Shown here in pieces: positions 4,347 through 64,000 of a stretch of DNA of 64,000 nucleotides. The translations under genes and the position numbers were made by a program. Every line of letters starts with the position of its first letter. Positions within the stretch are counted from its first letter, which is position 1. Under the pieces are notes generated by a model that was given only the letters and a program-made list of their open reading frames with translations, was not told the origin of the DNA and made no database searches. This stretch comes from Basidiobolus meristosporus CBS 931.73 (taxonomy: Eukaryota > Fungi > Basidiobolomycota), in contig MCFE01000087.1 in the NCBI GenBank assembly GCA_002104905.1, forward strand, positions 113,290-177,289, given 5' to 3'.

Positions 4347-4347
4347 T

Positions 4348-9550: not shown

Positions 9551-9696
9551 CCAACCTTTCACACACAAAATATATTATGGGTTGGTGCAAACATATGTAT
9601 CAACGTCATTATGCCAGAGAGTGCAATAATGAGCAAGATTGTGCTACATAGTGCAGAGTAATACAAGCACAATCCTGTCTATGGATAAGTATAATA

Positions 9697-20100: not shown

Positions 20101-21058
20101 GCAGGCTGAGGCAGCTCCAGTCAAGCCCAGCTTCCTGGGCACCAAAGTGTTCAAAGATTACGACCTGAAGAATACCCTGCCTTACATCGATTGGAATCCG
20201 TTCTTCCAAACCTGGCAGCTCAGAGGAAAGTACCCCAACAGAGGCTATCCAAAGATCTTCAACGACGAAACCGTTGGTGCCGAAGCCAAGAGACTGTACG
20301 ATGAAGCACAAGTCATGCTCAAGAAAATCCTTGATGAAAAGCTCTTACAAGCTAGCGGAATCGTTGCATTCTATCCGGCCAACAGCGTTGGTGATGACAT
20401 CGAGATCTATGCCGACGAGAGCCGTGCTGAACCCATTGGCACCTTTTACGGACTTCGCCAACAAGCCGAGAAGGACAAAGAATCCAACGAGCCCTATTAT
20501 TGCTTATCTGATTTCATCGCGCCCAAGGAGAGTGGAGTTGCCGATTACGTCGGTCTCTTTGCTGTAACATCCGGATTCGGAACCGACGAGTTGTGTGAAT
20601 CATTCCAGAAGGATCACGATGATTTCAATGTCATCATGGTGAAGGCCTTGGCGGATCGTTTGGCTGAGGCATTCGCGGAAATCCTACACAAAGAAGTTCG
20701 TACAGAGTATTGGGGATACTCCCCCGAGGAGACCCTGCAGACTAGCGATTTGTTGTCGGTGAAATACCAAGGGATCCGTCCGGCCCCCGGCTACCCCAGT
20801 CAGCCTGACCATACTGAAAAGCTGACCATGTGGAGTATCGCCAATATCCAGGAAAATTGCGGCATCGAGCTCACCGAGTCCCTAGCCATGGCTCCCGCCG
20901 CCAGTGTCAGTGGCCTGTACTTTGCCAACCCTAAAGCCCAATATTTCGCTGTAGGCAAAATCGACAAGGAGCAAGTGGCAAGCTACGCTGAGAGAAAGAA
21001 ATCGGATGTTGAAACCACCGAGAAGTGGCTTCGTCCCATCCTATCCTACGATACATAA
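17121..21058 (+). CDS. MTR: cobalamin-dependent methionine synthase (MetH/MTR), 4 exons
   Basis: Spliced start [23 protein letters not shown]. Homocysteine-binding GGCCG, pterin domain [11 protein letters not shown]12-binding [10 protein letters not shown] and LSGLITPSL, activation domain [12 protein letters not shown]. Confidence 0.97.
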
Positions 21059-32826: not shown

Positions 32827-35074
32827 ATGTATACTCATTTGAACGCTTCGAAGCGTGGCATCCCACGCTCTTGTCAAGGCAGGGTTTCTTCTCAGCAGCT
32901 GCGACGCCTGCCACATGTCTCGTTAAATCGACTTCGCTCAAGTCGACTTGGCGTTGGCCTTCGAAGCATATCTACAACGATAGAGAACACCTCGTGTCGA
33001 AGCTTGTCCACACTACCAGGCGTTCTGGACATTTCGGAGAAAGTGGATTTCTGGAAGGAAATTATGCAATTAGAGCGTCAAGCGGCTGGCGATGCCAAAG
33101 AGCTCGTCGAAGTGGTCAAAGAGAAGCGGGAGAAGGGCGGCCTGGGGAAACTGCTGGCCTTGTCTAGCCCAGACCTTCCGAAATTATTCGGTAGGTGAAA
33201 GCAGTCTACTATGCCCTCGATAAGTTGATGTGGTTTTGCAAACACGCTTTCCTAACACGCTTATCTTACCTTTACAGCCGGTGTACTCTGTATGTGCACT
33301 TCCTCAGCAATCACACTGGTAAGCGTTCGCTTGACGCACCCCCTCCCTTCACGGCCAAGTCACTAAACACCTATCAACAGTCTGTGCCCTACCTTATAGG
33401 CCGTATCATTGACGTGGTCACGAAAAAAGCCTCGGCCCCTCTTGGCATGACACCAAACCAATTTTTCACTGCGCTGGCCGGGGTTTTCGTACTCGGCGGG
33501 CTCGCTAACTTTGGACGCGTGGTAACTTTGAAGCTAGCTAACGAAAAAATCACAGCACGTCTTCGAACCAGCCTCTACCGTAGCATTATGGGTCAGGAGA
33601 TCGCGTTCTTTGACGCCACACGTAGCTCCGACTTGGTCAGTCGGTTGACACTAGATACCACCGTGGCAGCTAAGACAGTAACCAGCAACGTGTCTGATGG
33701 ATTGAGGGCCTTGGCTTCGGCCTTTGTGGGCTTTGGTATGATGTCCTATATTTCACCGAAGCTTTCCTTGACCATGATGGGATTCGTCCCTCCGTTCGCC
33801 GTCGGTGCAGCCATGTACGGCAGACGGGTTAAGAAGCTTTCCCGCTCCACCCAGGATGCATTGAGCGATATCAACGTGACGGCGGAGGAACGCATCAGCA
33901 ACATCCGTACCGTTCGCGCCTTCACCAAAGAGAAGGCGGAAGTCGAGCTTTACGAAAACCAAGTCAACGGGATCCTGACGCTGGCCAAAAAGGAGGCCTA
34001 CGCCAGTGGAATCTTTTACGGGGTCGCCGGAATGTCTGGGAACCTCACGGTCTTGGCGGTGCTCTCGATGGGGGGAACCATGGTGCTGAACAACGAGATC
34101 ACCATCGGCGCACTGTCTTCTTTCCTCATATACACCGCGCACGCGGGTTATTCCATGATGGGACTGGCCTCTTTCTTTGCTGAAACCATGAAAGGTTTAA
34201 GTGCGTGCACCAGGCTCTTCCAGTTGCTGGAGCGTAGACCAGAGGACCTGGTCAATGGGCAACAAACCATCCCCAACCTCCAAGGAAAGATCGAGTTCGA
34301 CAATGTTGACTTCGCCTATCCCACTCGACCAGACAATCAAGTGTTCAAGCAACTTAATTTCTCCCTCGAGGCCCACTCGGTGCTGGCCGTTGCCGGTGCC
34401 TCTGGCGCTGGTAAGACAACCATCGCCTCACTTTTGCTACGCTTCTACGACCCCGAGAACGGGTCAGTCAAGATCGACGGAGTGGATCTGAAGGAGTTGG
34501 AGCTTCACTGGTGGCACAATCAAATCTCCATCGTCAGTCAAGAGCCGGTTCTGTTTGCCAGCACCATCCGCGAAAACATCCGCTACGGCAAGCCAGACGC
34601 GCAGGATTGCGAGATCGAGGAGGCCGCCAAAATCGCCAACTGCGGGTTTATCGAGGAGTTCCCAGATGGCTTAGACACCTACGTCGGAGAGCGTGGGGTT
34701 GCATTAAGTGGCGGACAAAAGCAAAGGTAATTGGATCGCAGGGCCATACCAAGCCATCAACTAACCGATCGTATCCCTTCGATAGAATCGCCATCGCCAG
34801 AGCACTCCTGTGTAATCCCGCTATCTTGGTCTTGGACGAAGCTACCAGCGCTTTGGACAGCGAGAACGAAAAGCTGGTTCAGGAGGCACTTGATCGGCTC
34901 ACCCGTAATCGTACAGTGATCACCATCGCCCATCGCCTCTCCACACTTAAGAATTCCGATGTCGTGATTTGTCTCGAGCATGGACAGATAGCCGAGATGG
35001 GCACTTACGAACAGTTGGTTGCCCATGAGGGTCCCTTCAAGAAATTGATTGAAGGCCAAATATTGGAAGTGTAA
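32827..35074 (+). CDS. MDL1: mitochondrial ABC half-transporter, Mdl1/ABCB10 family
   Basis: Presequence-like N-terminus, TMD motifs ([21 protein letters not shown]), Walker A GASGAGKT, signature LSGGQKQR and Walker [13 protein letters not shown]. Multi-exon. Confidence 0.92.
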
Positions 35075-35866: not shown

Positions 35867-35875
35867 ATCAGATAA
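35867..35875 (+). promoter_or_regulatory. ATCAGATAA, SreA/Fep1-type GATA site between the small ORF and the dual-globin gene
   Basis: Exact match to ATCWGATAA about 270 bp upstream of the globin ATG. It is a single site and could be a chance match. Confidence 0.4.
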
Positions 35876-36145
35876 GTGGGCAGCAGGTGGGATCCTACCA
35901 AATCTAGCTTAGATTTGATATTCACCAGAACATTTGTAATTGCCCTACGCGCCATTACCCTCAAGATGGATGGTATTTTCCAAGCTGGGGAGATTCCCAT
36001 TTTGGGACTTGATTTTTCATCAATCCGCTCGATCTAGAGCCTCGGCAATCAAATAAAGTTCCTCAGCTTAGGGAAGAGCGGAGAAGTATAAATAGGAATG
36101 TGTCTAGGCTCCTCAACATTACTCGAAAATCGATCTACAATTAAC

Positions 36146-37249
36146 ATGTCTGCCGTTGAAAAGACCCTGTACGAGACCCTGGGTGGGGAAGAGACCATTT
36201 CCAAAGTGGTCGATGTGTTCTACAGCAAGTACGTCCTGAACGACGAAAGAATCAAGCATTTCTTCGTCGGCGTCGACATGGAGAAGCAGCGCGTCATGCA
36301 ATCCAAGTTCCTGTCATTCGCCTTCGGTGGCCCCGCCTTCAATGGAAAAAAGATGAACATCGCGCATCGCCATCTCAAGCTCACCGACGATCATTTCGAT
36401 GCGGTCATGGATGATCTCGGTAAGGCCCTACGCGACTTCGATGTTCCCGAGGAAATTATCGCCAAGGTGGCTGCAGTTGCGGAGACCACACGCAACGATG
36501 TCCTTGGTCGTTCCGAGAAAAACCCCGCTCCGAAGGAAATCCAAATGGACCACGTGGACCGCACCCTGCTCCATACCGATCCGGTTTATCGCTACAAGTA
36601 TGTTGCCAAGTTTGTTGATTTTTCCGACAAGGATGTCGAGGCTATCAAATCGGTGTCCGAGCAACTGGCTCCTCTCGGTGCAGTCCTGGTGGACGCGGTT
36701 TACGACAAACTCAGAGCCTTTGATATCACCTGGGAATCCATGGCCAAGCGCCACGAAGGGTATGCCGGGGAGGTGGTAGAGAACGTGCGCGATCTCAAGG
36801 TCGATAGCTCCCAGATTAAGTACCGAAAGGATATGCTGACCCGCTACATCGGCCGTCTTCTAACCAACCCGTACGACGAGAGAATGATCAAATACCTTGA
36901 CTGGGTCGCTAAGATCCATACCGACATCCCAGGAAAGAAGTCCAAAATCAACGTTGAGTACATCCATATCTCTGCGCTTCTTGGCTTCGTAGAAACCACC
37001 CTGATATGGGCGGTTAGCACTCTGAAGCTCGAGAGGGAGCACGAGCTTCAAGTGATTCTGGCCTTCAACAAGGTTCTTTGGCTTCAGAATGATTTCTTTG
37101 CTAAATACTACGCCAAAGATGGCTCCGACGTACCTGCATCCTTTGGTCTGCACGCACATCCAGCACCAGCGCCCAAATTTAACCTCAACAGCGCATTGGT
37201 CGGTGGGCTTGTAGCTGTTCTTGGATTATTGCTTGCTCAAAGATTCTGA
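36146..37249 (+). CDS. chimeric two-globin protein: group-I truncated haemoglobin + sensor/protoglobin-type globin + C-terminal hydrophobic anchor
   Basis: Domain 1: LYETLGG, VFY (B9-B10), HFF (CD1), Q..Q (E7/E11), FGGP, proximal AH. Domain 2: YVAKFVDFSDKD..LVDAVYDKL..YLDWVAKIH..WLQNDFF. Tail ALVGGLVAVLGLLLAQRF. No introns. Confidence 0.88.
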   Translation: MSAVEKTLYETLGGEETISKVVDVFYSKYVLNDERIKHFFVGVDMEKQRVMQSKFLSFAFGGPAFNGKKMNIAHRHLKLTDDHFDAVMDDLGKALRDFDVPEEIIAKVAAVAETTRNDVLGRSEKNPAPKEIQMDHVDRTLLHTDPVYRYKYVAKFVDFSDKDVEAIKSVSEQLAPLGAVLVDAVYDKLRAFDITWESMAKRHEGYAGEVVENVRDLKVDSSQIKYRKDMLTRYIGRLLTNPYDERMIKYLDWVAKIHTDIPGKKSKINVEYIHISALLGFVETTLIWAVSTLKLEREHELQVILAFNKVLWLQNDFFAKYYAKDGSDVPASFGLHAHPAPAPKFNLNSALVGGLVAVLGLLLAQRF

Positions 37250-37531: not shown

Positions 37532-39199
37532 ATGGCGAGTAATACAGTCCCAAGATCACATGGATCAAACAATAGAGTCCCACTTTCCCACACCTTCAAC
37601 CAAAGCTCACGTCAGGTCAGCGAACGTTGTTTTCTCAACTACACCCAGGCAGCTATTCAACACAACCCTACGTCTATCTTCTACTCTACCCACTCAGTAT
37701 GCTTGGACTTGCCGTACGCCTGATACCAGCCAACTCCAGATTACTTTTGAAGAAGCAAACACCTGCGGTGTTTGGTTCGGTATTTACACGTCAGGTAAGA
37801 CTACTGGGCGATTCCTTGGAACCCTCTCCTATCGACTAAACCCGCAACACCGTTAGAATTCCAACCGAACCGCAATCAGCCAAGCCCTTCGCAAGAAGGT
37901 TCCTTTTCCAGGCGCTTCAGATTCCTACTTCACCCAAGAGATGACCTTCATTGGCAAGACCGAGGCGATACCCACTTACCACGTCATGGATTCAGAGGGC
38001 AACATACTAGACCCCTCGCAGGAGCCTGAGGTTAGCGGCGATTTGAGCATATTGTATCCTGTGTATTCTCAACCATCGAAATCTAGGTTTCACCCGAGTT
38101 TGCGATAAAGATCTATGAGGATATGATCACTTTGAATATCATGGACTTGATTCTTTACGAAGCCCAGCGTCAGGGACGCATCAGCTTCTACATGACAAGC
38201 TATGGTGAAGAGGCGTACATAGGAAGCGCTGCGGGCCTCTCCAGCGAGGATATCGTCTTTGGACAGGTGAGCAACAGCCATCGAGGTCGTTAGTGAAGAA
38301 GTCATTACCAACTCTGTTGATTTTAGTATCGTGAAAGCGGGGTTCTGCTTTACCGCGGCTTCACTATGGACGAATTCATGAATCAATGCTATAGTAACGA
38401 GCTTGATTATGGCAAGGGTCGCCAGATGCCCGTCCACTACGGCTCCACCAAGCACAACTTCCACACCATATCCTCCCCTCTAGGCACTCAAATCCCCCAT
38501 GCCGCAGGCGCCGCATACACCCTGAAAATGGAGGGGAAGAAGAATTGCGTGATGTGCTACTTTGGCGATGGTGCGGCCAGCGAGGGAGACTTCCATGCTG
38601 CCTTGAACATGGCGGCAACCATGAAGTGTCCCGTGATATTCTTTTGCCGGAACAATGGGTTCGCTATCTCCACACCTACCTCCGATCAATATCGTGGAGA
38701 TGGTATTGCCAGTCGAGGAATCGGCTACGGAATAGACACGATACGTGTGGATGGTAACGATGTGTGGGCGGTATATAATGCAACCAAGGAGGCCAGAAGA
38801 CTCGCAACCGAAGAACATCGACCCGTCTTGATTGAGGCCATGACTTACCGAATTGGCCACCACAGTACTTCAGACGACTCCTCCGCCTACCGGTCGAAGA
38901 AGGAGGTTGAGGATTGGGAACGCACAGACAACCCGTTGGTCCGCATGCGCAAATACCTTGAAAACAAGGGATGGTGGAACGGAGAGAAGGAAAAGTCCTT
39001 CCGCAGTGACATTCGTATCAAACTGCTCAAGTCGTTCACCAACGCAGAAAAAGCCAAGAAACCCGCTGTGAAGGAGATGTTCGAAGATGTGTACGACCAG
39101 CTCACACCCAACCTGATCGAGCAGAAGGCTGAATTGGAGGGGATTCTAAAGAAGTACCCCGAATACTACCCATCTATCAAGAACCATGCCCAGAACTGA
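37532..39199 (+). CDS. BCKDHA: branched-chain 2-oxo-acid dehydrogenase E1 alpha subunit
   Basis: [38 protein letters not shown] motif [20 protein letters not shown], and [12 protein letters not shown]. The 5' exons were reconstructed by eye. Confidence 0.94.
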
Positions 39200-39440
39200 G
39201 CGTGGCGATTGTTTATTGTTCATGGCCTTGATTGATTGTTACCCAATTTAACCATCGCATAATCAAATGGATCCCCACCCAGTAATAAACGCGAGAAGCA
39301 TTCTGTTATATTGTATTTGATTCTAGGTTTATTCATACGGTTGATTTACACACTAAAAATTGCCCGTTCGGCAATCTGATAGCTTTGGAATTAGACTATG
39401 GAACAGTGTCAAATATCATAATATTCAACGGCAGGTGGAT

Positions 39441-40597
39441 TTACAATGCAATGGCTTCGGGTGAGATTTGGAAGATCTCTGGGCGCAGGAAAGTGTGCTC
39501 TCTATTGGATTTTAGGATGAAATAGCCACGGGATAATCCGGTGGATTTGTCGACCTCGCACATGGATTTATAGATCCGCTCTACGGAGACATAGTAACTG
39601 GGGTATTTGGATCTAGAAGGACGAATTGGTGAGTACGGGCGCGAATGAAACTTCCCGGAACCTCCCGTTTATATATGGAATTTACCTAGTCACATCCATA
39701 ATCAGCACCTGTTGCCGGTCTGCATTGTATCCGCCAATGGGGGAGAAATGACCTTCGCCAGCCTGGTCAAGGCCTCGACGGGAAAACGAGAGCACGATGT
39801 GCTCGGTGCCTCTGGAGCAGACCCGTTTGAGGTCGTCAACGAACTCTTGTAGGGTTACATCTCTGGCTGATTTGGCCTCGACTTCGCAATGGTTTTGCGC
39901 CAATTCTATAGAACGACTAGATTTAGTCGGGGAGAGGGTGTGCCTCTATCTAACAGAATACTCACCTAAAAACTCTGAATCGTTCACGCCGTTGCACTTG
40001 AACTGCTTGGCAGGATCGAACCCTTCCAATAACTCCTCGCTGTACCTAGAATGGAAGAGTGAATACTCCATTGTCACGTGGTTACAACACCAGATATCCA
40101 CTAACCATCTCCAGTTGCCTTTCCACCGCTTCTTGGGATCGATCTCCATAGCATTCAACACCATTGCCAGAGAGCTAGGGCCACAATCTAGAATAATCCA
40201 TGAATATCTGCCACCCGAAGGAAATAAATCGACTAGATAGCTTACATGAGGGCTCTGACTGGGTTGTGAAATTGCCCACCAAGTTGAAATAGCCTTCCGC
40301 GTATCCTTGGCATAAGCTCTCCTTGAATATTTGTTTTCCCTCCTCTGAGGTAAACGATGTCAGACATGCAGGGAGCTTTTGGCGATAGTGGGTATTTAAC
40401 AGGACGCTGTAATCCCCACGACAAGGAAGCTTGAATGAGGAGTGTGGTTGGTCGACCTCAAGGGGAAGGTTGTTTAAAGCAACAGCGCGGACATTCTGCG
40501 TTTTCGAAACCATATGCCGAAGTAGGAGCTTATTGATTGGTCGAGAAAGTAAAGAGGGAGCATTATTCCGGGATACAATACGAAAACTATTCATCAT
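39441..40597 (-). CDS. PCS: short phytochelatin-synthase-like protein (catalytic domain only, ~301 aa), 5 exons, with an apparent 1-nt frameshift at ~39600
   Basis: FTTQSEPSYCGPSSLAMVLNAM (catalytic Cys), WKGNWRWYSE, GHFSPIGGYN (His), IMDVTR (Asp), KYP..STGLSRGYFIL. Exons 40597-40246, 40187-40106, 40045-39966, 39905-39686 and 39611-39441 total 905 nt, one short of a multiple of 3. Confidence 0.88.
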
Positions 40598-40701
40598 ATA
40601 CATGTGGCGAGGAAAGAGGGAACTGATTGTTTGTTCATGAGATCTCATTCCCTATTATATATCTTTTCAACGCGACCCCCTATTTCCAGGGTGCCATCTC
40701 A

Positions 40702-40980
40702 ATCTGATAGATGAAGACTTTTTTGGAAAGACGGAACGGTGTGGTTACTTGATGTGATACTCCTCAATAATCTGATTGTTTCATGACCAATCATTTGGCA
40801 GCGATGTAAAAATCTGATAACGCAATGTCTGGACTATGTAGTACCAACTTATTGCTAAGAAAAATCAGATAAAAATTGCTGGAAAATTATCAGATGCTCT
40901 GATGTAAGAAAGATTATTAATCTGTACTGCTTAGGAATTGGATGGTTGGCCTGAAATAGGAAGCATTCGTATTATCAGAT
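40702..40980. promoter_or_regulatory. cluster of ATCWGATAA GATA sites upstream of the PCS-like gene
   Basis: Perfect sites at 40812-40820, 40864-40872, 40887-40895 (reverse) and 40972-40980 (reverse). Near-matches at 40702-40710 (ATCTGATAG) and 40770-40778 (ATCTGATTG). Confidence 0.75.
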
Positions 40981-41327: not shown

Positions 41328-41960
41328 TTAATAGAAAGTGGAAGGACGCTTGGCAATGAAGAGGCTGCGGTTGGCCTTGTTGGCAGGGCGAGCAACACGG
41401 TGAGGAAGAGGGAAACGAAGCTTGGGAACCATAAGCTGCTTGATGTAGGGACGACGGACATCAGCGTTAGCGACTTCAGCAACACGGATGATTTGGATGG
41501 ATCTGAAGCGAGCACGATGGCGAGCGGCCATGTCTTGGTAACAAGCCTCGACGGCGTCGTTTCTGGTCAACTCACGGTATTCCTTGTACATGTTGTGGGT
41601 ACCGGAGCGAGAGTCATAACGAAGCCAGATACCGAAGGTCTTGATCTTCAAGGGGTTCTTCTCGAAGATCTCGTTCAAGGAAACGATCTCACCGGCAGCC
41701 TTCTTGACCTTCTTGAGCTTGGTCAAGAAGTACCAGAAACGACTCTTGGCAACGACTTCATTAGGAGCGAAGATTCTCATACGGAAGAGTCTGGGAACGG
41801 GCTCCTTCTCGGAAGGGAGCTTGCGGCCAATGATTTGGTATTCGTGGAGCTACACATGAAGCGAGTTAACAACCAGTGAATAAGCGAAGGGTAATGGATG
41901 CATCACGAAGATTGATTGATGATTTCTACGCAACCAAGAATATGCACTTACTCTACCCAT
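41328..41960 (-). CDS. RPL20: 60S ribosomal protein eL20 (L18a), 2 exons
   Basis: MGR|[57 protein letters not shown]. Confidence 0.97.
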
Positions 41961-52812: not shown

Positions 52813-54079
52813 CTAAGGGTTCCCCTCCCGAATTGGGAGCAACGGTGTATCTTCACTAGGACAAGTGTCTTGCTTACATATTGGGCACTGGATTCAATGG
52901 GCAAATGTTAGGGATAGCGCTAAAGATGATGATAGGCAATCACCGGCGTGCATTGGTACTTACAAATTTCTTACGAGTGGTGAGCCAAGGATCTAGGTTC
53001 ATTGGTAAATGCTATGGTTAGTTGTTGTCTTTGGGTAAAGCCTCTGGTGGATGCCAATTACCAATGCATTCAACATGGAACTCATGTTTGCACGGGAGGA
53101 TACGCAATTCATCCTCGTCTATATAGTCTTCCAGACAAATGGCGCATTCTTGTGGTTCGTTGCCCTTTCTTTTCTCCTTGTAGAATTTCTTTTTGGGGAG
53201 ATTCGATATAACACTTACAGGTGCTAGGTCACGCTTCTCGCGCTGTCTTTGGCGAAATCTCCATAGGCCGTAAATGAATGCCATCATGATAGTAGGGGAT
53301 AGCAGTGTAACGATTATAACGTCCAGCAAGGGCCTAACCGGAGAAAAAGTTAATCGCGCGCTACAGAAAAGTAAGAGCTGCTAGACTGTTACCAATCCAA
53401 CATGTCATCCTTAGTTAGTCGGATTAGCATGGGTTCATCTAGGAACAGAGAGAGGTATCGGATTTGCTTGTATTGAGACTGCTGAGTAAACACAGATGGG
53501 ATCTTCACATCGGTTGTATCTCCTATCCAATCCATATGTTGTCTTGAGTAAGAGAGCCAAGGTATCCTAACAAGTTTTTCAAGCTTACCTGAGGCATACA
53601 TCGTTACCAAGCTATCAAACTCAGCATCTCCTACAATTACTGCGATAGCTCCTGACTTTTGCATATTACGAACTTTTTCGATGAAAGAGCATTTTCCCCT
53701 TTCGACTAGAGCTATCCAGTCTGTAACGGTTGGTGGAGACACAACTGTGCAAGCATGCTTCAGTTCAGGTGCAAGCATCTCCAACGGAATTAGGGTTCCA
53801 TTGATGCCTTTTTCAGTAAGACGTGGGCCAAAGGCAGCAATGCGGTCCTAGAGAAAAGAATGTTAGCAGAAGGAAATCCAACACAACCAAAGGATGTGGA
53901 CATACTTGGTACGTATCGTTTGTAGACTAATTTTAAAATAAAACAAAGGTGTGAGTGAAGATTAGGGTGCAAAGAGAGCAATGTGCAATTACCAAAACAA
54001 TTATGGTTGCATGAACACACGAAGTAAGACCAATGGCGATCCCCAACAACAAAGTACTATATAGCTTCCACAATCTCAT
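52813..54079 (-). CDS. PA-domain / RING-H2 transmembrane E3 ubiquitin ligase (RNF13/RNF167-like)
   Basis: Signal peptide MRLWKLYSTLLLGIAIG, PA domain AAFGPR..IALVERGKCSFIEKVRNMQKSGAIAVIVGD, a TM helix, and RING-H2 CAICLEDY..LPCKHEFHVECI|DPWLTTRKKF|CPICK. Confidence 0.9.
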
Positions 54080-54779
54080 CGCTGTCAAAGCTCAATACGC
54101 GCTCTATTCTGATATTTAAAGGTAGGTGGTGTATGGGTTAATACGGGTACAATTAGCAAAATTAATAAAGTAATAGCGCAATAGTAAGGTGCGGGATTTT
54201 GGGAGAAGGAGGACTAAGATGCTATTCAGAAAAAAAGGCTTTGATGACTGGGCTGTCCAAAAATAGAGAGGTCACCATCATAGGTTCTCCAAATAAATGG
54301 ATTTGGCCAATCTTTTATGTTGTCCAATCAGATGACAGTGGCTCCGCTGACCAACATGTGCGCAATGACTGCAGGACAGTCTCGAAATTGTGCCAGTTTC
54401 TATTAGATCATGTGACTTGCCAACCCTAGCTGTAATTGTTGAAAACAAACTTCATGCCATTGGTCGTGCCTTCTGATCGCACCTTCTGATCGCACAGCAA
54501 TGCACCTACTTATGAGTGCGCTTATAAAACAATCGCTCATCACAATGAATTGATGCTAGCTATACAGCCGTCTTTGTCCGCTATGCCACGCTTTTCCGCT
54601 CGATTAAGGGGCCGTGATATTTTGTACCATCGTCAATATATATACTCGCTGTGTCCAAATTACGGGGCCATTGGTTGACTGGTATATTAAATGTTTGAAG
54701 TGGCTGGGTAAACCTGTGTGTACTTCTATTTGAGCACTATGAATGTACTGGAAAAAAGTTGTTTGAGGAAGGCTCCAAG

Positions 54780-55240
54780 AAGCAATTTGGAGTGTGTGGT
54801 TTATATGTTGGAGATGTTGGAAGTGATGGGTGGTGCAAGTAGATTATGTAGCTTTTGCTTAATAATATATGGAATGAAAGGTGGTATTTGTACATTTACC
54901 AAGTCTTGACAAAGCAAACATATGAAATATGTTTATGAGGATCCCAAATATATGTGTTTCAAGTTGGTGGCTTATTAGACAATTTTGAATAGTTTCATCA
55001 AAATATGATCTGAGATAGTGGAAATGTTGTGAATTGACAGTGCTAATGTTGTAGCTGGTGTCAGAAGTGGATACTTGAATAGTGTTGTAGATTTTGTAGT
55101 TATGCCTAAATACTCACTGAACCTACAAATCCTAGAGTATTTTACTCAAATCCCTTGTTGGGATTTACTTGGGGCATTTTACCAAAATATCAGGTACCCA
55201 GAATATGAAAACCTGATAAGTTGTCCAAAGATCCCTTTAT
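54780..55240. repeat. two very old copia LTR relics in opposite orientations
   Basis: Diverged LTR blocks: ggagatgttggaagtgatggg..gtagattatg (minus sense) and caaatcctagagtattt..ccttgttgggatttac..caggtacccagaa (plus sense). Boundaries are approximate. Confidence 0.6.
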
Positions 55241-55330
55241 ACTTTAAGTATATTATATGAGTTTGTTTTGCCAAGAATGTCTAAAAGTACAAATAGCACT
55301 TTCACATTTAATAAATCAACAAGTAAAAAC

Positions 55331-55554
55331 TGTTGTAAGAGTCTTGGAGATTTTGGAAGTGGTTGGGAGGACAAGTAGATTATGTGGTATTCACTTAATG
55401 ATTTATTGAATGTAAAAGTAGTATTTATACTTTTACATGGTCCTGGCATTGCAAACACGTAGAATAGGTTTAGGAAGGTCCCAAAAACATGTGTGCAAAG
55501 TTTGGGGCTGCTTGGACAACTTTGAGAATTTTCATCTTCTGGGTACCTTGTATT
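55331..55554 (-). repeat. copia LTR interrupted by insertion of the element starting at 55555
   Basis: Begins TGTTGTAAGAG at 55331 and stops abruptly at ..gggtaccttgtatt, directly before a new TGTTGTAAAA. Confidence 0.8.
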
Positions 55555-58500
55555 TGTTGTAAAAATTCGTATTTCCACCTAAATATTCACCTAACTTAGT
55601 CACTTAGATCATCACCTTCAAATCCTAGAGAATACTGACCAAATTCCTTGTTGGGATATACTTAGAATATTTACCCAGAACATGAAAATTCTCAAAGTTG
55701 TCCAAACAGCCCCAAACTTTGCACACATGTTCTTGGGACCTTCCTTAACGTATCCTATGTGTTTGTAATGCCAAGACCAGGTAAAAGTATAAATACTACT
55801 TTTACATTCAATAAATCATTAAGTGAAAACCACACAATCTACTTGTTCTCCCAATCACTTCCAATATCTCCAAGACTCTTACAACAGGTTATGAGCCCCA
55901 AGCTGTCACTCTCTGCAATGTCTACTACTGCTATTACTGGAATTCTTCCCTCTGCTGAAAAGTTGGATGGCTCTAACTACCAAGTGTGGAAGGTGAAGAT
56001 TGTTGTAAGAGTCTTGGAGATATTGGAAGTGATTGGGAGAACAAGTAGATTATGTGGTTTTCACTTAATGATTTATTGAATGTAAAAGTAGTATTTATAC
56101 TTTTACATGGTCTTGGCATTACAAACACGTAGAATAGGTTAAGGAAGGTCCCAAGAACATGTGTGCAAAGTTTGGGGCTGTTTGGACAACTTTGAGAATT
56201 TTCATGTTCTGGGTACCTGGTATTTTGGTGAAAATATTCTAAGTAAATCCCGACAAGGAATTTGGTCAGTATTCTCTAGGATTTGAAGGTGATGATCTAA
56301 GTGACTAAGTTGGGTGAATATTTAGGTGGAAAATACGAATTTTTACAACACTCCCACTCAGCTAAATGTTCATACTGACTAGTCCTAATTTTGACCTAAG
56401 ATATTCAAACTTGTCTCTAGCTAATGGTTTGGTAAATATGTCTGCAATCATTTCATCTGTAGGACAGTAAACTAAGCTAACTAAGTTATTCTCTATAGCT
56501 TCACATATGAAATGATGTCTAATATCTATGTGCTTGGTTCTAGCATGAAAAGTTGGATTTCTACCTAATTGTATACATCCTTGATTATCTTGAAATAAAG
56601 TAATAGGCGTTTTTTGACATAGGCCTAAATCTGTAAAGAGCTTTCTTAACCACATTGCTTCTTTTGTAGCTTCACAGGCTGCCATATACTCTGCCTCTGT
56701 AGTAGAAAGTGCTACGGTTGGTTGCTTTCTTGAATTCCATGAAATGGCTCCTTTACAGTAAAGAAAGGTATATCCTGTGGTGGATCTTCTGTCTTCTAAA
56801 TTTTGTCCCCAATCAGCATCAGAGTATCCCACAAGATCCTGTTCTGAATCCTTATAAGTGTATCTTAAGCAGATATCAGCAGTTCCTTTTAGGTATCTAA
56901 AAATCCGCTTAACTGCTGCAATATGATCAGATCCATAATTCTGATTATGTTGGCTGACAACTCCCACTGAATATGAGATATCTGGACGTGTTCCAAGCAT
57001 GATATATATCAGACTGCCGACCATAGATTGATAAGGAAAGTCAGGGCTTTCAGATGGCACCAAGCTCTCTTGATTTGGTTGAGTTTTGACCAAGTTAAGG
57101 TTTGTCTCCATTGGGGTAGCTGCCGGTTTGCAGTCTTCCATTTTGTACTTCTTTAGTATATCTTGAATATACTTGGATTGGCTTAGGGTAATAGTCTGGG
57201 TACTTCTGTCTATGGAGAACTTAATCCCTAAGTAGTAACTAAGTTCTCCTAGATCGGACATCTTGAACTCCTTAGATAGGCTGGATTTAGTCTCTTCCAA
57301 TGTTTCTAGGTTATTGGCGGCTATAATAAGATCATCCACATATAGAGCTAATAGAACTGGATTTGCTCTATCTGGCTTATAGTATATACTATAGTCAGCA
57401 TTACTCCTTTTGAAACTCAAAGATTCCAAATAAGAATCTATCTTGCAATTCCAGGCTCTCGGTGATTGTTTGAGACCATATAGTGACTTTTTAAGCTTGC
57501 AGACCAAATGGGGGTTATCTTGGTCAACAAACCCATCAGGCTGGTCCATATACACGTCCTCATCAAGTTCTCCATTCAAAAATGCAGTTTTTACATCCAT
57601 TTGATGAATAAAAAACTTATATTTGGCTGCAATAGCCAATATTAATCTGATGGAATTAAACTTGGCTACCGGTGCAAAGGTCTCAGTATAGTCAAGTCCT
57701 TTTGTTTGAGAGTATCCTTTGGCTACAAGTCTTGCTTTGTATCTTTCAATTGTACCATCAGCCTTGTATTTTGTCTTGAAGACCCATCTGCATCCAATTG
57801 ATTTTCGGTTGATTGGTAATTTGACTAAGTCCCAAGTTTGATTTTCCATCAGTGCCTGATATTCCTCAGTCATTGCAGATCTCCAAAACTTTGTCTGAGG
57901 GCTATTTAGGGCCTCTTTTACAGTCTGGGGTTCATCAACATGGACTGAATAGGCATAGGCTAAGTTTGTACCCTCATTGATATAGTAATTTGGGCTATTT
58001 CTTGTCCGATTGGATCTCCGGGCATTTGATACTGGAATGATCACTTCTGGGATATTCCTGGGCACTGATTCTGGCTGAACCACGGTTGTAGAGTCCTCTG
58101 GAGTGAAAAAATTTTCATTGTTTTGCTCTGATTCAATCCTGACAATTGGTGGACTTGAGATCAAATTTTCGTCATCATCTGATGTCATTTTTTGTGAAAA
58201 TTTTGAATTTTCATCAAACAACACATCCCTGGACTTGATCAGCTTCTTTGCTTTCGGTATTGTAGAGTCTGTATGCCTTACTCTCATTGCAGTAGCCCAA
58301 AAATATGCATTTTACACTTTTTGGCTCAAATTTTGACTGATTTCCGGCCAGTTTTTTGGCATATGCTGTACACCCAAATATTCTTAGATGTTCTGCACTT
58401 GGTCTGTATCCATACCATGCTTCAAATGGAGTAGAATCACGAAGTATTCTGTTATAACTCCTATTTTTAAGATATACAGCAGTGGCAACTGATTCCGCCC

Positions 58501-61500
58501 AAAAATCATAGGATAATTTTTGATCATGGATCATAGATCTTGCCATATCAATTATTGATCTGTTAGCTTGTTCTGCTACTCCATTTTGCTGTGGGGAGTA
58601 TGGTACAGTAGTCTCTTGCTTTATCCCATGAATTTTGCAGAAGTGGATGAAGAGTTTTGAGGTATATTCTCCACCATTGTCAGAGCGTATTTTCTTGATT
58701 TTTTCACCAGTTTCTCTCTCCACCATGGCTTTAAACTCCCTGAGCTTAGACAGAGCTTCTTCCTTTCTCTCCATGAAGTAGACCCATGTGTATCTTGTAT
58801 AATCATCAATAAAAGTGATTAAATACTTCATCCCGCCTAAGGATAAATTTTGCATAGGTCCACACAGATCTGAGTGAATTAGATCTAATTTTTTCTTAGT
58901 TTTGATTAACCCAGAGCTCTTGAACGGTTGTCTGGCTTGTTTCCCATATATGCAGGCTTCACAGTGCTCCAAATTAGCTGGGGGATCAATTTTCACTCCA
59001 GAAATTAGCTGATCTTTGATCATTTTACGCAAATAATCAAAATTGATGTGTCCAAATCTCCTGTGCCAAAGCATTGGTGTTTCTTCATTTAAGTTACTTA
59101 TATTGGCTTCCAGATATGATGGAATATAAGTCAACTTGTATAGATTCTGATCTCTGATGCCCAAAGCAATATGAGCACCATTTTGATCAGTGATCCTGCA
59201 TCCAGAATTGTCAAAACTGAAACTGAGTCCTTCTGCTGTGGCCTTGCTTACAGAGAGTAGGTTCTTGGCTATTTCTGGTACATAGAGTACTTCTTTAAAG
59301 GTCAGTGTATGGCTTCCTTCACTGCTTCTAAGGTTTACTTGGATAGTTCCTTCTCCCACTGCATCAAGTGTTCTATCGTCACCCATGAAAACCTTCTTAA
59401 TTGGAATTTCTTGATATTGGGTAAAAAGTTCTTTTTGGTGTGTAAAGTGTTGAGAAGCTCCAGAGTCAATATACCACGTCTGAGAATCCTTGTTTGTGGT
59501 CATATTTAGTGCAGATATGAATAGTCTATCTTCAGTTGTTGCAGCATTTCCATATTCAGGCTTCTTTTGCTGATAATCTCTCTTTTTGAAACACCGGTCT
59601 GATGTGTGTCCTTTCCTTTTGCAGTAGTTGCAAAATAGGTTGCTGTTGCCTTTGTAGGGTCTTGGGTACCTCCTTTGTTGGTTATCATTGCTTATTAAAG
59701 CATTTTCTTCTTCCTTCTTATTGGCGCTTGATTTTCTTAATTCTTCATCCAGGAGCCTTCCATATACGTAATTTAAGGTCAAATCTTCAGTTCTGGACTC
59801 TAGGGCTGATACAAGGCCCTGAAACTCGTCTGTCAGGCTATTCAGGATGGTAACTATCACATCCTCATCAGTAGTTGGTACGCCCACAGATTCCATCTCA
59901 TCTACCAGCAGGGTAATTCTGTTAATTAGATTTTTCATTTCTTCTCCTGGCAGCATCTTTGTAGTAAAGAATTTTCTTCTCAGATACATTTTCTTGGCAG
60001 CTGAACATGACTGGTAGGTGTCTTCTAATGCCTTCCAGGCATTCTTTGCCGTTTTTGCTCTTGAGCATTGAATTAGCAATTTGTCCTTGACATTAAGGCA
60101 AATGCAGTTAAAGGCACTTTGTTCTTTCTTCTGGTACTTTAAGGCTTCCTCTCCCACGTTTTTAGGAGGGCATTCTTCTCCCATGACAATATCCCAAAGG
60201 CCTCTTTCTTGCAGCAGCATCTTCATCTTCACCTTCCACACTTGGTAGTTAGATCCATCCAACTTTTCAGCAGAGGGAAAAATTCCAGTAATAGCAGTAG
60301 TAGACATTGCAGAGAGTGACAGCTCGGGGCTCATAACCTGTTGTAAGAGTCTTGGAGATATTGGAAGTGATTGGGAGAACAAGTAGATTATGTGGTTTTC
60401 ACTTAATGATTTATTGAATGTAAAAGTAGTATTTATACTTTTACATGGTCTTGGCATTACAAACACGTAGAATAGGTTAAGGAAGGTCCCAAGAACATGT
60501 GTGCAAAGTTTGGGGCTGTTTGGACAACTTTGAGAATTTTCATGTTCTGGGTACCTGGTATTTTGGTGAAAATATTCTAAGTAAATCCCGACAAGGAATT
60601 TGGTCAGTATTCTCTAGGATTTGAAGGTGATGATCTAAGTGACTAAGTTAGGTGAATATTTAGGTGGAAAATACGAATTTTTACAACAGATGAAGATGCT
60701 GCTACAGAAGAGCTTGGATATTGTCATGGAGAAGAATGCCTCCTAAAACATGGGAGAGGAAGCCTTAAAGTACCAGAAGAAAGAACAAAGTGCCTTTAAC
60801 TGCATTGCCTTAATGTCAAGGACAAATTGCTAATTCAATGCTCAAGAGCAAAAACGCAAAGAATGCCTGGAAGCATTAGAAGACACCTACCAGTCATGTT
60901 CAGCTGCCAAGAAAATGTATCTGAGACAAAAATTCTTTACTACAAAGATGCTGCCAGGAGAAGAAATGAAAAATCTAATTAACAGAATTACCCTGCTGGT
61001 AGATGAGATGGAATCTGTGGGCGTACCAACTACTGATGAGGATGTGATAGTTACCATCCTGAATAGCCTGACAGACAAGTTTCAGGGCCTTGTATCAGCC
61101 CTAGAGTCCAGAACTGAAGATTTGACCTTAAATTACGTATATGGAAGGCTCCTGGATGAAGAATTAAGAAAATCAAGCGCCAATAAGAAGGAAGAAGAAA
61201 ATGCTTTAATAAGCAATGATAACCAACAAAGGAGGTACCCAAGACCCTACAAAGGCAACAGCAACCTATTTTGCAACTACTGCAAAAGGAAAGGACACAC
61301 ATCAGACCGGTGTCTCAAAAAGAGAGATTATCAGCAAAAGAAGCCTGAATATGGAAATGCTGCAACAACTGAAGATAGACTATTCATATCTGCACTAAAT
61401 ATGACCACAAACAAGGATTCTCAGACGTGGTATATTGACTCTGGAGCTTCTCAACACTTTACACACCAAAAAGAACTTTTTACCCAATATCAAGAAATTC

Positions 61501-64000
61501 CAATTAAGAAGGTTTTCATGGGTGACAATAGAACACTTGATGCAGTGGGAGAAGGAACTATCCAAGTAAACCTTAGAAGCAGTGAAGGAAGCCATACACT
61601 GACCTTTAAAGAAGTACTCTATGTACCAGAAATAGCCAAGAACCTACTCTCTGTAAGCAAGGCCACAGCAGAAGGACTCAGTTTCAGTTTTGACAATTCT
61701 GGATGCAGGATCACTGATCAAAATGGTGCCCATATTGCTTTGGGCATCAGAGATCAGAATCTATACAAGTTGACTTATATTCCATCATATCTGGAAGCCA
61801 ATATAAGTAACTTAAATGAAGAAACACCAATGCTTTGGCACAGGAGATTTGGACACATCAATTTTGATTATTTGCGTAAAATGATCAAAGATCAGCTAAT
61901 TTCTGGAGTGAAAATTGATCCCCCAGCTAATTTGGAGCACTGTGAAGCCTGCATATATGGGAAACAAGCCAGACAACCGTTCAAGAGCTCTGGGTTAATC
62001 AAAACTAAGAAAAAATTAGATCTAATTCACTCAGATCTGTGTGGACCTATGCAAAATTTATCCTTAGGCGGGATGAAGTATTTAATCACTTTTATTGATG
62101 ATTATACAAGATACACATGGGTCTACTTCATGGAGAGAAAGGAAGAAGCTCTGTCTAAGCTCAGGGAGTTTAAAGCCATGGTGGAGAGAGAAACTGGTGA
62201 AAAAATCAAGAAAATACGCTCTGACAATGGTGGAGAATATACCTCAAAACTCTTCATCCACTTCTGCAAAATTCATGGGATAAAGCAAGAGACTACTGTA
62301 CCATACTCCCCACAGCAAAATGGAGTAGCAGAACGAGCTAACAGATCAATAATTGATATGGCAAGATCTATGATCCATGATCAAAAATTATCCTATGATT
62401 TTTGGGCGGAATCAGTTGCCACTGCTGTATATCTTAAAAATAGGAGTTATAACAGAATACTTTGTGATTCTACTCCATTTGAAGCATGGTATGGATACAG
62501 ACCAAGTGCAGAACATCTAAGAATATTTGGGTGTACAGCATATGCCAAAAAACTGGCCGGAAATCAGTCAAAATTTGAGCCAAAAAGTGTAAAATGCATA
62601 TTTTTGGGCTACTGCAATGAGAGTAAGGCATACAGACTCTACAATACCAAAGCAAAGAAGCTGATCAAGTCCAGGGATGTGTTGTTTGATGAAAATTCAA
62701 AATTTTCACAAAAAATGACATCAGATGATGACAAAAATTTGATCTCAAGTCCACCAATTGTCAGGATTGAATCAGAGCAAAACAATGAAAATTTTTTCAC
62801 TCCAGAGGACTCTACAACCGTGGTTCAGCCAGAATCAGTGCCCAGGAATATCCCAGAAGTGATCATTCCAGTATCAAATGCCCGGAGATCCAATTGGACA
62901 AGAAATAGCCCAAATTACTATATCAATGAGGGTACAAACTTAGCCTATGCCTATTCAGTCCATATTGATGAACCCCAGACTGTAAAAGAGGCCCTAAATA
63001 GCCCTCAGACAAAGTTTTGGAGATCTGCAATGACTGAGGAATATCAGGCACTGATGGAAAATCAAACTTGGGACTTAGTCAAATTACCAATCAACCAAAA
63101 ATCAATTGGATGCAGATGGGTCTTCAAGACAAAATACAAGGCTGATGGTACAATTGAAAGATACAAAGCAAGACTTGTAGCCAAAGGATACTCTCAAACA
63201 AAAGGACTTGACTATACTGAGACCTTTGCACCGGTAGCCAAGTTTAATTCCATCAGATTAATATTGGCTATTGCAGCCAAATATAAGTTTTTTATTCATC
63301 AAATGGATGTAAAAACTGCATTTTTGAATGGAGAACTTGATGAGGATGTGTATATGGACCAGCCTGATGGGTTTGTTGACCAAGATAACCCCCATTTGGT
63401 CTGCAAGCTTAAAAAGTCACTATATGGTCTCAAACAATCACCAAGAGCCTGGAATTGCAAGATAGATTCTTATTTGGAATCTTTGAGTTTCAAAAGAGTA
63501 ATGCTGACTATAGTATATACTATAAGCCAGATAGAGCAAATCCAGTTCTATTAGCTCTATATGTGGATGATCTTATTATAGCCGCCAATAACCTAGAAAC
63601 ATTGGAAGAGACTAAATCCAGCCTATCTAAGGAGTTCAAGATGTCCAATCTAGGAGAACTTAGTTACTACTTAGGGATTAAGTTCTCCATAGACAGAAGT
63701 ACCCAGACTATCACCCTAAGCCAATCCAAGTATATTCAAGATATACTAAAGAAGTACAAAATGGAAGACTGTAAACCGGCAGCTACCCCAATGGAGACAA
63801 ACCTTAACTTGGTCAAAACTCAACCAAATCAAGAGAGCTTGGTGCCATCTGAAAGCCCTGACTTTCCTTATCAATCTATGGTTGGCAGTCTGATGTATAT
63901 CATGCTTGGAACACGTCCAGATATCTCATATTCAGTGGGAGTTGTCAGCCAACATAATCAGAACTATGGATCTGATCATATTGCAGCAGTTAAGCGGATT
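55555..64000 (+). mobile_element. outer Ty1/copia element (5' LTR 55555-55886), split in gag by a younger copy and running off the window
   Basis: LTR, PBS and gag start run to 56000, and gag resumes at 60689. ORF 60915-63554 covers gag-PR-IN-RT. A 1-nt frameshift occurs near 63497, after which RT continues to 64000. Confidence 0.93.
56001..60688 (-). mobile_element. full-length, very young Ty1/copia element (4688 bp)
   Basis: LTRs 56001-56350 and 60339-60688 (350 bp each, one difference seen by eye). PBS GGTTATGAGCCC and PPT GAGTGGGAG are present. ORFs 58214-60466 and 56362-58287 are separated by one extra base near 58256. Probable TSD AAGAT. Confidence 0.97.

What the first reader, a model, noticed from the sequence alone, without database searches (positions are those of the whole stretch)
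40702..40980. Dense array of iron-repressor (SreA/Fep1-type) sites in the PCS-like promoter
Four exact ATCWGATAA matches fall within 170 bp (two per strand), with two 8/9 matches closer to the ATG. At ~60% AT the chance expectation is roughly 0.006 exact sites per 170 bp, so the cluster is not random. ATCWGATAA is the established extended consensus of fungal iron-sensing GATA repressors that control siderophore and iron-uptake genes. The spacer lies 5' of PCS and 3' of RPL20, so PCS is the likely target. An iron-starvation-induced PCS-like enzyme would be an unexpected link between glutathione-derived thiol peptides and iron homeostasis.
Basis: partly seen in the sequence, partly recalled or inferred. 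Interest (0 to 1): 0.8.

Follow-up and report, generated by a model that had tools for sequence, protein, structure and literature searches.

The report
Iron-switch sites upstream of PCS-like gene
A tight cluster of DNA words that iron-sensing repressors bind in other fungi lies just ahead of a phytochelatin-synthase-like gene of Basidiobolus meristosporus and recurs ahead of related genes in Basidiobolus ranarum, Mucor and Rhizopus, so iron probably controls this poorly understood protein family, though nobody has tested it.

Summary
Four exact ATCWGATAA sites (40812, 40864, 40887, 40972) and two 8/9 sites (40702, 40768) lie 111-383 bp upstream of the ATG (40597, minus strand) of a spliced, expressed, catalytic-domain-only PCS-like gene (annotated protein P0004) of Basidiobolus meristosporus CBS 931.73. 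About 0.04 exact sites are expected there.

The array is single-copy and is not part of a repeat. It belongs to the PCS-like gene, not to RPL20.
- The B. ranarum orthologue has 5 exact sites, although BLASTN cannot align the two promoters.
- A paralogue clade with different neighbours has 2-3 exact sites within 650 bp of the start (a fourth at -1043 in B. ranarum).
- A third paralogue clade has none, which serves as an internal control.
- The Cys-less PCS-like genes of Mucor ambiguus and Rhizopus microsporus carry 3 and 5 exact sites within about 220 bp of the start. Two Kickxellomycotina genes carry weaker clusters.

The best reading (0.7) is a conserved SreA/Fep1-type iron-repressor array, so that the gene is induced by iron starvation. 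The iron response, the regulator gene and the enzyme's role were not tested.

The scan had already noted ATCWGATAA clusters on other DNA of this genome; I did not check those notes. I found no paper linking PCS-like genes to iron regulation.

The parts
40972..40980 (-). Exact ATCTGATAA site, -383 from the ATG
   Evidence: Aligned with an exact site in the B. ranarum promoter (A2).
40887..40895 (-). Exact ATCTGATAA site, -298
40864..40872 (+). Exact ATCAGATAA site, -275
40812..40820 (+). Exact ATCTGATAA site, -223
   Evidence: The core is positionally conserved in B. ranarum (A2).
40768..40776 (-). 8/9 site ATCAGATTA, -179. The TCWGATT core is kept in all four clade A/B promoters.
40702..40710 (+). 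8/9 site ATCTGATAG, -113. This proximal site is invariant (TATCAGAT on the gene strand) in all four clade A/B promoters.
40787..40791 (+). CCAAT box (ATTGG on the gene strand) inside a block conserved between B. meristosporus and B. ranarum. It is a candidate site for the CCAAT-binding complex.
   Evidence: A2; also present in Bran_A (A4). The function is inferred.
40721..40739 (-). Conserved promoter block (TTCCGTnTTTCCAAA on the gene strand) of unknown factor
   Evidence: A2.
40675..40694 (-). Conserved partly palindromic block (ACCC..AAAT.GGGG on the gene strand) between the proximal site and the TATA box
   Evidence: A1, A2 and A4.
40655..40661 (-). TATA-like box (TATATAA on the gene strand), about 55 bp upstream of the 5' end of the mRNA contig
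   Evidence: Read from the sequence. Conserved in A2.
39429..40601 (-). Expressed, spliced PCS-like mRNA. Exons are 40601-40246, 40187-40104, 40043-39966, 39905-39686 and 39612-39429. The annotated CDS is 40597-39441 (P0004, 301 aa).
   Evidence: A 922-nt spliced contig in run X3 with four GT..AG introns. Pfam PF05023. The NCBI gene model is in L003.
41328..41780 (-). Last exon of the upstream neighbour RPL20/L18A. It is not the target of the array.
   Evidence: Pfam PF01775. Similarity to paralogues and to the B. ranarum orthologue stops at or shortly after its stop codon. The array occurs without this neighbour in L001 and L004.

Best explanation
The 280-bp array is a functional cis-regulatory module of the PCS-like gene. 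It consists of six binding sites of the ATCWGATAA type for a two-finger, SreA/Fep1-family iron-sensing GATA repressor, placed 50-320 bp upstream of a TATA box.

By analogy with Aspergillus SreA and S. pombe Fep1, the repressor would occupy the sites when iron is sufficient. It would leave them under iron starvation, and the gene would then be induced. A conserved CCAAT box within the array may add CBC/HapX-type input.

The product keeps the Cys-His-Asp triad of phytochelatin synthase, lacks the Cys-rich tail, and has a basic, acid-poor N-terminal extension like a mitochondrial presequence.

Shown here: the sites, their excess over chance, the gene model and its expression, and conservation of the array across orthologues, paralogues and two phyla.

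Inferred: the regulator, the iron signal, the direction of regulation and the enzyme's role. The most likely roles are glutathione cleavage or thiol-peptide formation in mitochondria during iron starvation, for example to buffer competing metals or to change the glutathione/Fe-S signal.
For: Cluster statistics
- 8 exact sites against 1.74 expected in the window.
- 4 exact sites against 0.04 expected in the spacer, and 0 of 20,000 simulations reached 4.
- every WGATAA in the spacer has the ATC prefix. This is the extension that separates SreA-type sites from generic HGATAR sites (PMC2610380).

Position
- A spliced mRNA contig starts at 40601, and a TATA-like box lies at 40655-40661. The array is therefore in the proximal promoter.

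Conservation in Basidiobolus
- The B. ranarum orthologue (syntenic L005) has 5 exact sites and 8 cores. All exact sites of that 6.7-kb locus lie in the promoter. BLASTN finds no alignment between the two promoters.
- Paralogue clade A has 2 exact sites (L001) and 3 within 650 bp plus one at -1043 (L004), with different neighbours.
- Pooled over the three promoters other than the one under study: 19 cores and 10 exact sites, against 0.68 and 0.12 expected.
- The clade C paralogues (L006-L008) have none, at similar GC content.

Other fungi
- Mucor ambiguus has 3 exact sites at -135 to -62.
- Rhizopus microsporus has 5 exact sites at -221 to -24 and none elsewhere in 7 kb.
- Mycoemilia and Coemansia have weaker clusters.

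Literature
- ATCWGATAA is the SreA consensus and matches the in vivo sites of Urbs1 and Fep1 (PMC2610380, PMC10500206).
- SreA homologues are reported in Mucor genomes (PMC7011435).
- Siderophore-type GATA factors are described as well conserved in a fungal survey that included B. meristosporus (PMC5311114).
- S. pombe Pcs1-GFP is mitochondrial (PMC4410428).
Against: - No expression data under defined iron conditions were available.
- The one transcriptome run shows the mRNA at a contig depth similar to its neighbour's, so the gene is not silent under that unknown condition. Contig depth is a poor measure of expression.
- I could not look for the SreA orthologue in Basidiobolus because no tool-derived seed sequence was available.
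- The two positionally invariant sites are the imperfect ones (ATCTGATAG and ATCWGATT). Eight of 25 cores read GATT rather than GATA. The factor's true preference may therefore be the ATCWGAT palindrome.
- The text of the S. pombe Fep1 ChIP/RNA-seq paper does not mention PCS. Sporobolomyces PCS1 mRNA did not respond to Cu, Cd or Zn (PMC4410428).
- The link between this motif and canonical iron-uptake genes in this genome rests only on earlier, unchecked scan notes.
Confidence: 0.7

Rival explanations
1. The array is a conserved cis-element for a factor that recognises the ATCWGAT palindrome and responds to a signal other than iron, such as another metal, redox state or sulfur status. That factor could be a two-finger GATA protein or a different protein.
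For: The invariant part of all 25 cores is the ATCWGAT palindrome, and a third of them end in TTA or TTG rather than TAA. The positionally conserved sites are the imperfect ones. The regulator was not identified, and SreA is documented experimentally only in Dikarya (PMC10500206). A PCS-like gene would fit naturally into a metal or thiol regulon.
Against: Most sites (14 of 25) match the exact 9-mer SreA consensus. In Rhizopus and Mucor all of them are ATCTGATAA. The same word was found in silico upstream of the Mucor rhizoferrin synthetase gene (PMC9226013). Earlier scan notes report it at siderophore genes of this genome, but I did not check them.
Confidence: 0.17
2. The sites are bound by a single-finger GATA factor of the nitrogen (AreA/Gat1-type) or light (WC-type) class.
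For: All such factors recognise a GATA core. Four of the sites contain HGATAR.
Against: Every GATAA in the spacer carries the ATCW extension (4 of 4, against 4 of 51 elsewhere). Single-finger nitrogen factors do not need that extension. There are no additional plain HGATAR sites in the spacer (5 in total, all within the cores). According to PMC2610380, HGATAR alone barely distinguishes SreA targets whereas the extended word does.
Confidence: 0.08
3. The array serves the neighbouring RPL20 gene (a 3' element) or an unannotated transcript in the spacer, rather than the PCS-like gene.
For: The array lies 350-630 bp downstream of the RPL20 stop codon. No read-level data define the RPL20 3' end.
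Against: The clade A paralogues, Mucor and Rhizopus all have the array upstream of the PCS-like gene without an RPL20 upstream neighbour. The other RPL20 paralogues of the genome lose similarity exactly at the stop codon. The spacer has no ORF of note.
Confidence: 0.03
4. The cluster is a chance occurrence, or part of a dispersed or low-complexity repeat.
For: The spacer is AT-rich (37% GC) and the word is AT-rich.
Against: None of 20,000 composition-matched simulations reached 4 exact sites. There is no extended repeat and the region is single-copy in the genome run. The cluster recurs in six further promoters. The AT-rich transposon flanks of the window (24 kb) hold 1 exact site.
Confidence: 0.01

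Closest known systems
SreA regulon promoters of Aspergillus fumigatus (ATCWGATAA; Schrettl et al. 2008, PMC2610380) and the Fep1/Urbs1 sites of S. pombe str1 and fio1-fip1 and of U. maydis sid1
   Same: The 9-mer is identical, including the partly palindromic ATC extension. Several copies lie on both strands within a few hundred bp of the start codon.
   Different: The organism is a zoopagomycete, where this system has not been studied. The target is a PCS-like gene, which is not among the described targets (iron uptake, siderophore synthesis, hapX, grxD). Neither binding nor iron response has been shown.
Nostoc sp. PCC 7120 Alr0975 (NsPCS; PDB 2BTW, 2BU3, 6THO), the catalytic-domain-only phytochelatin synthase
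   Same: It is the best solved relative (E about 3e-19 over residues 77-279). The Cys, His and Asp of the papain-like triad align, and there is no Cys-rich C-terminal domain.
   Different: The fungal protein has a roughly 55-residue basic N-terminal extension and four introns. It groups with fungal PCS, not bacterial ones. Its activity is unknown.
The 'PCS-like' clade of Mucoromycotina with a substituted catalytic cysteine (Shine, Shakya and Idnurm 2015, PMC4410428)
   Same: It is a divergent, fast-evolving PCS paralogue clade in an early-diverging fungal lineage. Its Mucor and Rhizopus members carry 3 and 5 exact ATCTGATAA sites just upstream.
   Different: The Mucorales clade has Gly in place of the catalytic Cys and keeps a short Cys-rich tail. 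Basidiobolus clades A and B keep the Cys and have lost the tail. In the tree the two clades are separate, and Basidiobolus A+B is sister to Basidiobolus C.
S. pombe Pcs1 (canonical fungal PCS; mitochondrial by GFP fusion, PMC4410428)
   Same: It has an N-terminal extension with the features of a mitochondrial presequence. The Basidiobolus extension has 6-8 K+R and 0-2 D+E in its first 50 residues.
   Different: Pcs1 has the long Cys-rich C-terminal domain. No iron regulation is reported: it was not measurable on the iron arrays (PMC1929147) and is not mentioned in the text of the Fep1 ChIP paper.
Secreted gamma-glutamyltransferase Ggt1 of Histoplasma, part of a glutathione-dependent ferric reductase (from my own recollection; no paper was checked here)
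   Same: It is a precedent for an iron-limitation-linked enzyme that cleaves glutathione into a thiol peptide.
   Different: It belongs to a different enzyme family, is secreted, and releases Cys-Gly. The protein here looks intracellular or mitochondrial and would release gamma-Glu-Cys.

Membership tests
SreA/Fep1-type iron-GATA repressor binding array | Extended consensus ATCWGATAA rather than bare HGATAR | tested here: met
   There are 4 exact and 2 one-mismatch sites. All WGATAA words in the spacer carry the ATC prefix. The consensus is as defined in PMC2610380.
SreA/Fep1-type iron-GATA repressor binding array | Several copies clustered in the promoter of the regulated gene, in excess over background | tested here: met
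   The sites lie at -383 to -111 from the ATG, upstream of the TATA box and of the mRNA 5' end. The excess is shown.
SreA/Fep1-type iron-GATA repressor binding array | Evolutionary conservation of the sites as a functional element | tested here: met
   Conserved in the orthologue, in the paralogue clade, and in Mucor and Rhizopus. Absent from the clade C paralogues. The promoters are otherwise unalignable.
SreA/Fep1-type iron-GATA repressor binding array | A two-GATA-finger repressor with a Cys-rich iron-sensing region encoded in the same genome | not tested
   No seed sequence was available from any tool. Support is only indirect and from the literature (PMC5311114 and PMC7011435, the latter for Mucor).
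SreA/Fep1-type iron-GATA repressor binding array | Iron-dependent repression of the downstream gene, with derepression under iron starvation or in a regulator mutant | not testable with these tools
   Only one transcriptome run of unknown growth condition was found, and it is held as contigs.
SreA/Fep1-type iron-GATA repressor binding array | The same word enriched at canonical iron-uptake and siderophore genes of the same genome | not tested
   Only unchecked earlier scan notes report this. The window holds no such genes.
Phytochelatin synthase (Pfam PF05023) | Phytochelatin catalytic domain | tested here: met
   The exons hit PF05023 at E from 8.5e-11 to 2.3e-20. P0004 is annotated with PF05023.
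Phytochelatin synthase (Pfam PF05023) | Papain-like Cys-His-Asp catalytic triad | tested here: met
   YCGPSS, GHFSP and IMDV are conserved and align to Alr0975.
Phytochelatin synthase (Pfam PF05023) | Cys-rich C-terminal metal-sensing domain (PF09328) of canonical eukaryotic PCS | tested here: not met
   The protein has 301 aa and no Cys in its last 25 residues. Clade C and the Kickxellomycotina proteins keep a short CxxxCxxxxxC-type tail.
Phytochelatin synthase (Pfam PF05023) | Phytochelatin synthesis or glutathione deglycination activity | not testable with these tools
   This needs an enzyme assay.

The most novel reading that the evidence does not exclude
PCS-like proteins are an old, so far unrecognised part of the iron-starvation regulon of early-diverging fungi (Zoopagomycota and Mucoromycota). 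In each lineage the iron-regulated copy is a divergent paralogue: tail-less in Basidiobolus and Cys-less in Mucorales. It would be targeted to mitochondria and would have a role in iron-starvation adaptation distinct from classical heavy-metal-activated phytochelatin synthesis.
Probability: 0.45. Interest if true: 0.75.

Novelty: new member of a known kind. Interest (0 to 1): 0.62.

Why it matters
- The SreA/ATCWGATAA system has been characterised experimentally only in Ascomycota and Basidiomycota. Conserved arrays in Basidiobolus, Mucor and Rhizopus suggest that it works in early-diverging fungi too.
- The result gives a first functional handle on two orphan groups: catalytic-only PCS-like proteins, and the Cys-less 'PCS-like' clade of Mucorales, whose function was explicitly left open in PMC4410428.
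- Iron acquisition is central to the biology of Mucorales. A conserved, probably iron-regulated gene of unknown role is an obvious candidate for expression and knockout tests in tractable species.
- It would also connect glutathione-derived thiol chemistry with iron homeostasis in a new way.

Tried and rejected
- Dispersed repeat: rejected.
- Chance: rejected.
- RPL20 as the target: rejected, because the array travels with the PCS-like gene.
- The other four exact sites in the window lie in a retrotransposon pol ORF (630), in the MetH coding sequence (20504), 231 bp upstream of the globin-fusion gene (35867) and in an unassigned ORF (47642). They are single sites, and the one at 35867 is not kept in B. 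ranarum. I treat them as background.
- A hidden gene downstream of the clade A paralogues, which might explain their second, 3' cluster: no conserved ORF was found.
- ABC transporter at 33195-35074 as a phytochelatin (HMT1) or Atm1-type exporter: the best solved relatives are ABCB10, ABCB1 and ABCB19, so there is no such link.
- GATA-finger genes in the window and in all fetched loci: none found.
- Published evidence of iron-regulated PCS in S. pombe, Lichtheimia, Mucorales or Basidiobolus: none found.
- Seed for the Basidiobolus SreA orthologue or for canonical iron-uptake genes: none could be obtained from any tool, so both tests were left out.

Full report
**The observation**

The sequence holds exact ATCWGATAA sites at 40812 (+), 40864 (+), 40887 (-) and 40972 (-). 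One-mismatch sites lie at 40702 (+, ATCTGATAG) and 40768 (-, ATCAGATTA).

- The whole window has 8 exact sites against 1.74 expected from dinucleotide-preserving shuffles.
- A Markov model trained on the 678-bp spacer itself expects 0.04 exact sites and 0.27 ATCWGAT cores. Four and six are observed, and none of 20,000 simulations reached those numbers.
- The 24 kb of equally AT-rich transposon flanks in the window hold one exact site.
- All four WGATAA words in the spacer carry the ATC prefix, against 4 of 51 elsewhere.
- The copies share nothing beyond the motif and a few A residues.
- In the genome run only one contig covers the region, so it is not a dispersed repeat.

**The locus**

The window is Basidiobolus meristosporus CBS 931.73, contig MCFE01000087.1. 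Locus L003, fetched through the annotated protein P0004, shows the same gene order in reverse orientation.

Both flanking genes are on the minus strand. RPL20/L18A ends at 41328. The PCS-like gene is annotated from 40597 to 39441.

Run X3 behaves as a transcriptome. It gives a 922-nt contig with four GT..AG introns: exons 40601-40246, 40187-40104, 40043-39966, 39905-39686 and 39612-39429. The gene is therefore real, spliced and expressed under at least one unknown condition.

The contig's 5' end (40601) lies about 55 bp downstream of a TATA-like box at 40655-40661. The six sites therefore sit 50-320 bp upstream of the TATA box, at -111 to -383 from the ATG. The transcription start is only approximated by a contig end.

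**The gene product**

The exons hit Pfam PF05023. P0004 (301 aa) aligns to the cyanobacterial catalytic-only enzyme Alr0975, with the Cys, His and Asp of the triad in place.

It lacks any Cys-rich tail. It has a basic, acid-poor N-terminal extension (7 K+R and 2 D+E in the first 50 residues). This resembles the mitochondrial presequence proposed for fungal PCS; S. pombe Pcs1-GFP is mitochondrial (PMC4410428).

**Comparative test**

Basidiobolus has three PCS-like clades:
- Clade B: the window gene P0004 and B. ranarum P0005, which is syntenic (RPL18A, PCS, E1_dh, globin).
- Clade A: P0001 and P0003, with different neighbours.
- Clade C: P0006, P0007 and P0008.

In the tree, A and B are sisters on a long stem, and together they are sister to C.

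Counts within 650 bp upstream of the start codon:

| Promoter | ATCWGAT cores | Exact 9-mers |
|---|---|---|
| B. meristosporus clade B (window) | 6 | 4 |
| B. ranarum clade B | 8 | 5 |
| B. meristosporus clade A | 5 | 2 |
| B. ranarum clade A | 6 | 3 |
| Three clade C promoters | 0 | 0 |

B. ranarum clade A has a fourth exact site further upstream, at -1043. The clade C promoters have comparable GC content.

The three clade A/B promoters other than the one under study hold 19 cores and 10 exact sites, against 0.68 and 0.12 expected from the window background.

BLASTN aligns the two species' RPL20 genes at 94% and their PCS genes at 69%, but finds nothing in the promoter. MAFFT alignments show islands of identity in an otherwise unalignable background:
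- the proximal site, with TATCAGAT invariant in all four promoters;
- a second TCWGATT core;
- two of the distal sites;
- a CCAAT box (window 40787-40791);
- a TTCCGTnTTTCCAAA block;
- an ACCC..AAAT.GGGG block;
- the TATA box.

This is the pattern of a selected cis-regulatory module in which some sites have turned over. Because clade A has no RPL20 neighbour, the array belongs to the PCS-like gene.

**Beyond Basidiobolus**

- The Mucor ambiguus PCS-like gene P0073 has three exact ATCTGATAA sites at -135, -118 and -62. Its locus holds 4 exact sites against 0.21 expected.
- The Rhizopus microsporus gene P0093 has five exact sites between -221 and -24, and none elsewhere in 7 kb.
- Both belong to the Mucorales clade in which the catalytic Cys is replaced by Gly. 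Shine et al. noted this clade as PCS-like proteins of unknown function (PMC4410428).
- Mycoemilia scoparia has 1 exact and 2 near sites at -362 to -166. Coemansia has 1 exact and 1 near site at about -880.
- A more distant relative from an unidentified sample (L002) has none, but only 425 bp upstream were available.

**Interpretation**

ATCWGATAA was derived from the A. fumigatus SreA regulon. It matches the in vivo sites of U. maydis Urbs1 and S. pombe Fep1 (PMC2610380), and reviews give it as the SreA recognition sequence (PMC10500206).

The partly palindromic extension is what distinguishes these sites from the HGATAR sites of single-finger nitrogen factors. Every GATAA in the spacer has it.

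SreA homologues are reported in Mucor genomes (PMC7011435). A survey of fungal GATA factors that included B. meristosporus calls the siderophore-regulating class well conserved (PMC5311114).

The most likely mechanism is therefore repression by an SreA-type factor in iron sufficiency and induction under iron starvation. I give this 0.7.

The main reservations are these:
- No iron-dependent expression data exist.
- The regulator was not identified in this genome.
- The mRNA is present in the one available transcriptome.
- A third of the cores read GATT, and the positionally invariant sites are the imperfect ones. This leaves room for a factor with a somewhat different preference or a different signal (0.17).

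**What the protein might do under iron starvation**

This part is inference only. Four possibilities, in no firm order:
- It cleaves glutathione to gamma-Glu-Cys, or makes short thiol peptides, inside mitochondria. That could buffer Zn, Cu, Cd or Mn, which compete with scarce iron for Fe-S and haem assembly.
- It handles metals that enter through iron-starvation-induced uptake systems.
- It lowers glutathione and so changes the glutaredoxin/[2Fe-2S] signal that SreA-type and HapX-type sensors read.
- It has a non-catalytic role, as the Cys-less Mucorales clade suggests.

The paralogue pattern (iron-type array on the divergent tail-less copies, none on the copies that keep the Cys-rich tail) argues that the role differs from classical metal-activated phytochelatin synthesis.

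**Novelty**

I found no paper linking PCS or PCS-like genes to SreA, Fep1 or iron starvation in fungi.

The cis-element and its regulator family are known, so this is a new member (target) of a known kind, in phyla where the system is unstudied.

Earlier notes of this scan report ATCWGATAA clusters at other loci of this genome: a siderophore importer, a ferrichrome-type NRPS, haem oxygenases, mitoferrin/GRX4 and a CreA-like triad. I did not check them, and they are leads only.

Noticed in passing
L001:7214-7405 and L004:5440-5671: Both clade A paralogues (B. meristosporus and B. ranarum) carry a second cluster of ATCWGATAA-type sites 200-480 bp downstream of their stop codon, with 1 and 2 exact sites plus near matches. 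No conserved ORF or annotated gene follows. The purpose is unknown.
   Followed up: partly
L001:5848-6000: The NCBI model of P0001 (256 aa) probably starts too late. An in-frame upstream ATG at L001:5848 adds an N-terminal extension that aligns with the conserved extension of P0003, P0004 and P0005.
   Followed up: partly
window 40787-40791, with conserved blocks at 40721-40739 and 40675-40694: A CCAAT box and two further blocks are conserved between the otherwise unalignable B. meristosporus and B. ranarum promoters. The CCAAT box could give CBC/HapX-type input, and the other two blocks have no assigned factor.
   Followed up: partly
window 41328-41420 (RPL20): The genome run holds at least four further RPL20 copies at about 90% identity. 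Their similarity stops exactly at the stop codon, so this is a multi-copy ribosomal protein gene family with unrelated 3' flanks.
   Followed up: no
window 39318-40778 (run X5, organism C): A relative's contig matches the PCS-like gene and proximal promoter at about 87% identity and ends at 40778, inside the array. It could not be read further, so the distal sites in that strain are unknown.
   Followed up: no
window 17294-21058: An intron-free, five-domain cobalamin-dependent methionine synthase (MetH) ORF of 1254 aa.
   Followed up: no
window 32827-35074: An ABCB half-transporter whose best solved relatives include mitochondrial ABCB10. It is not Atm1 or HMT1-like. It lies three genes from the PCS-like gene, next to the Bac_globin-protoglobin fusion (36098-37249) and the BCKDH E1-alpha gene (about 37900-39199).
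   Followed up: partly
window 35867-35875: A single exact ATCAGATAA site lies 231 bp upstream of the globin-fusion gene. It is not conserved in the B. ranarum locus L005, so it is probably chance.
   Followed up: yes
window 1-14000 and 54000-64000: AT-rich (37-39% GC) flanks with long ORFs. The one scanned (492-1661) has LTR-retrotransposon pol domains (RNase H, integrase).
   Followed up: partly
P0059-P0113 (Mucorales hits): The Cys-less PCS-like clade (QSSPxHGGVSSL) keeps a conserved C-terminal KLKCKDCxRxCH motif. Basidiobolus clades A and B show the opposite pattern: they keep the catalytic Cys and have lost the Cys tail.
   Followed up: partly
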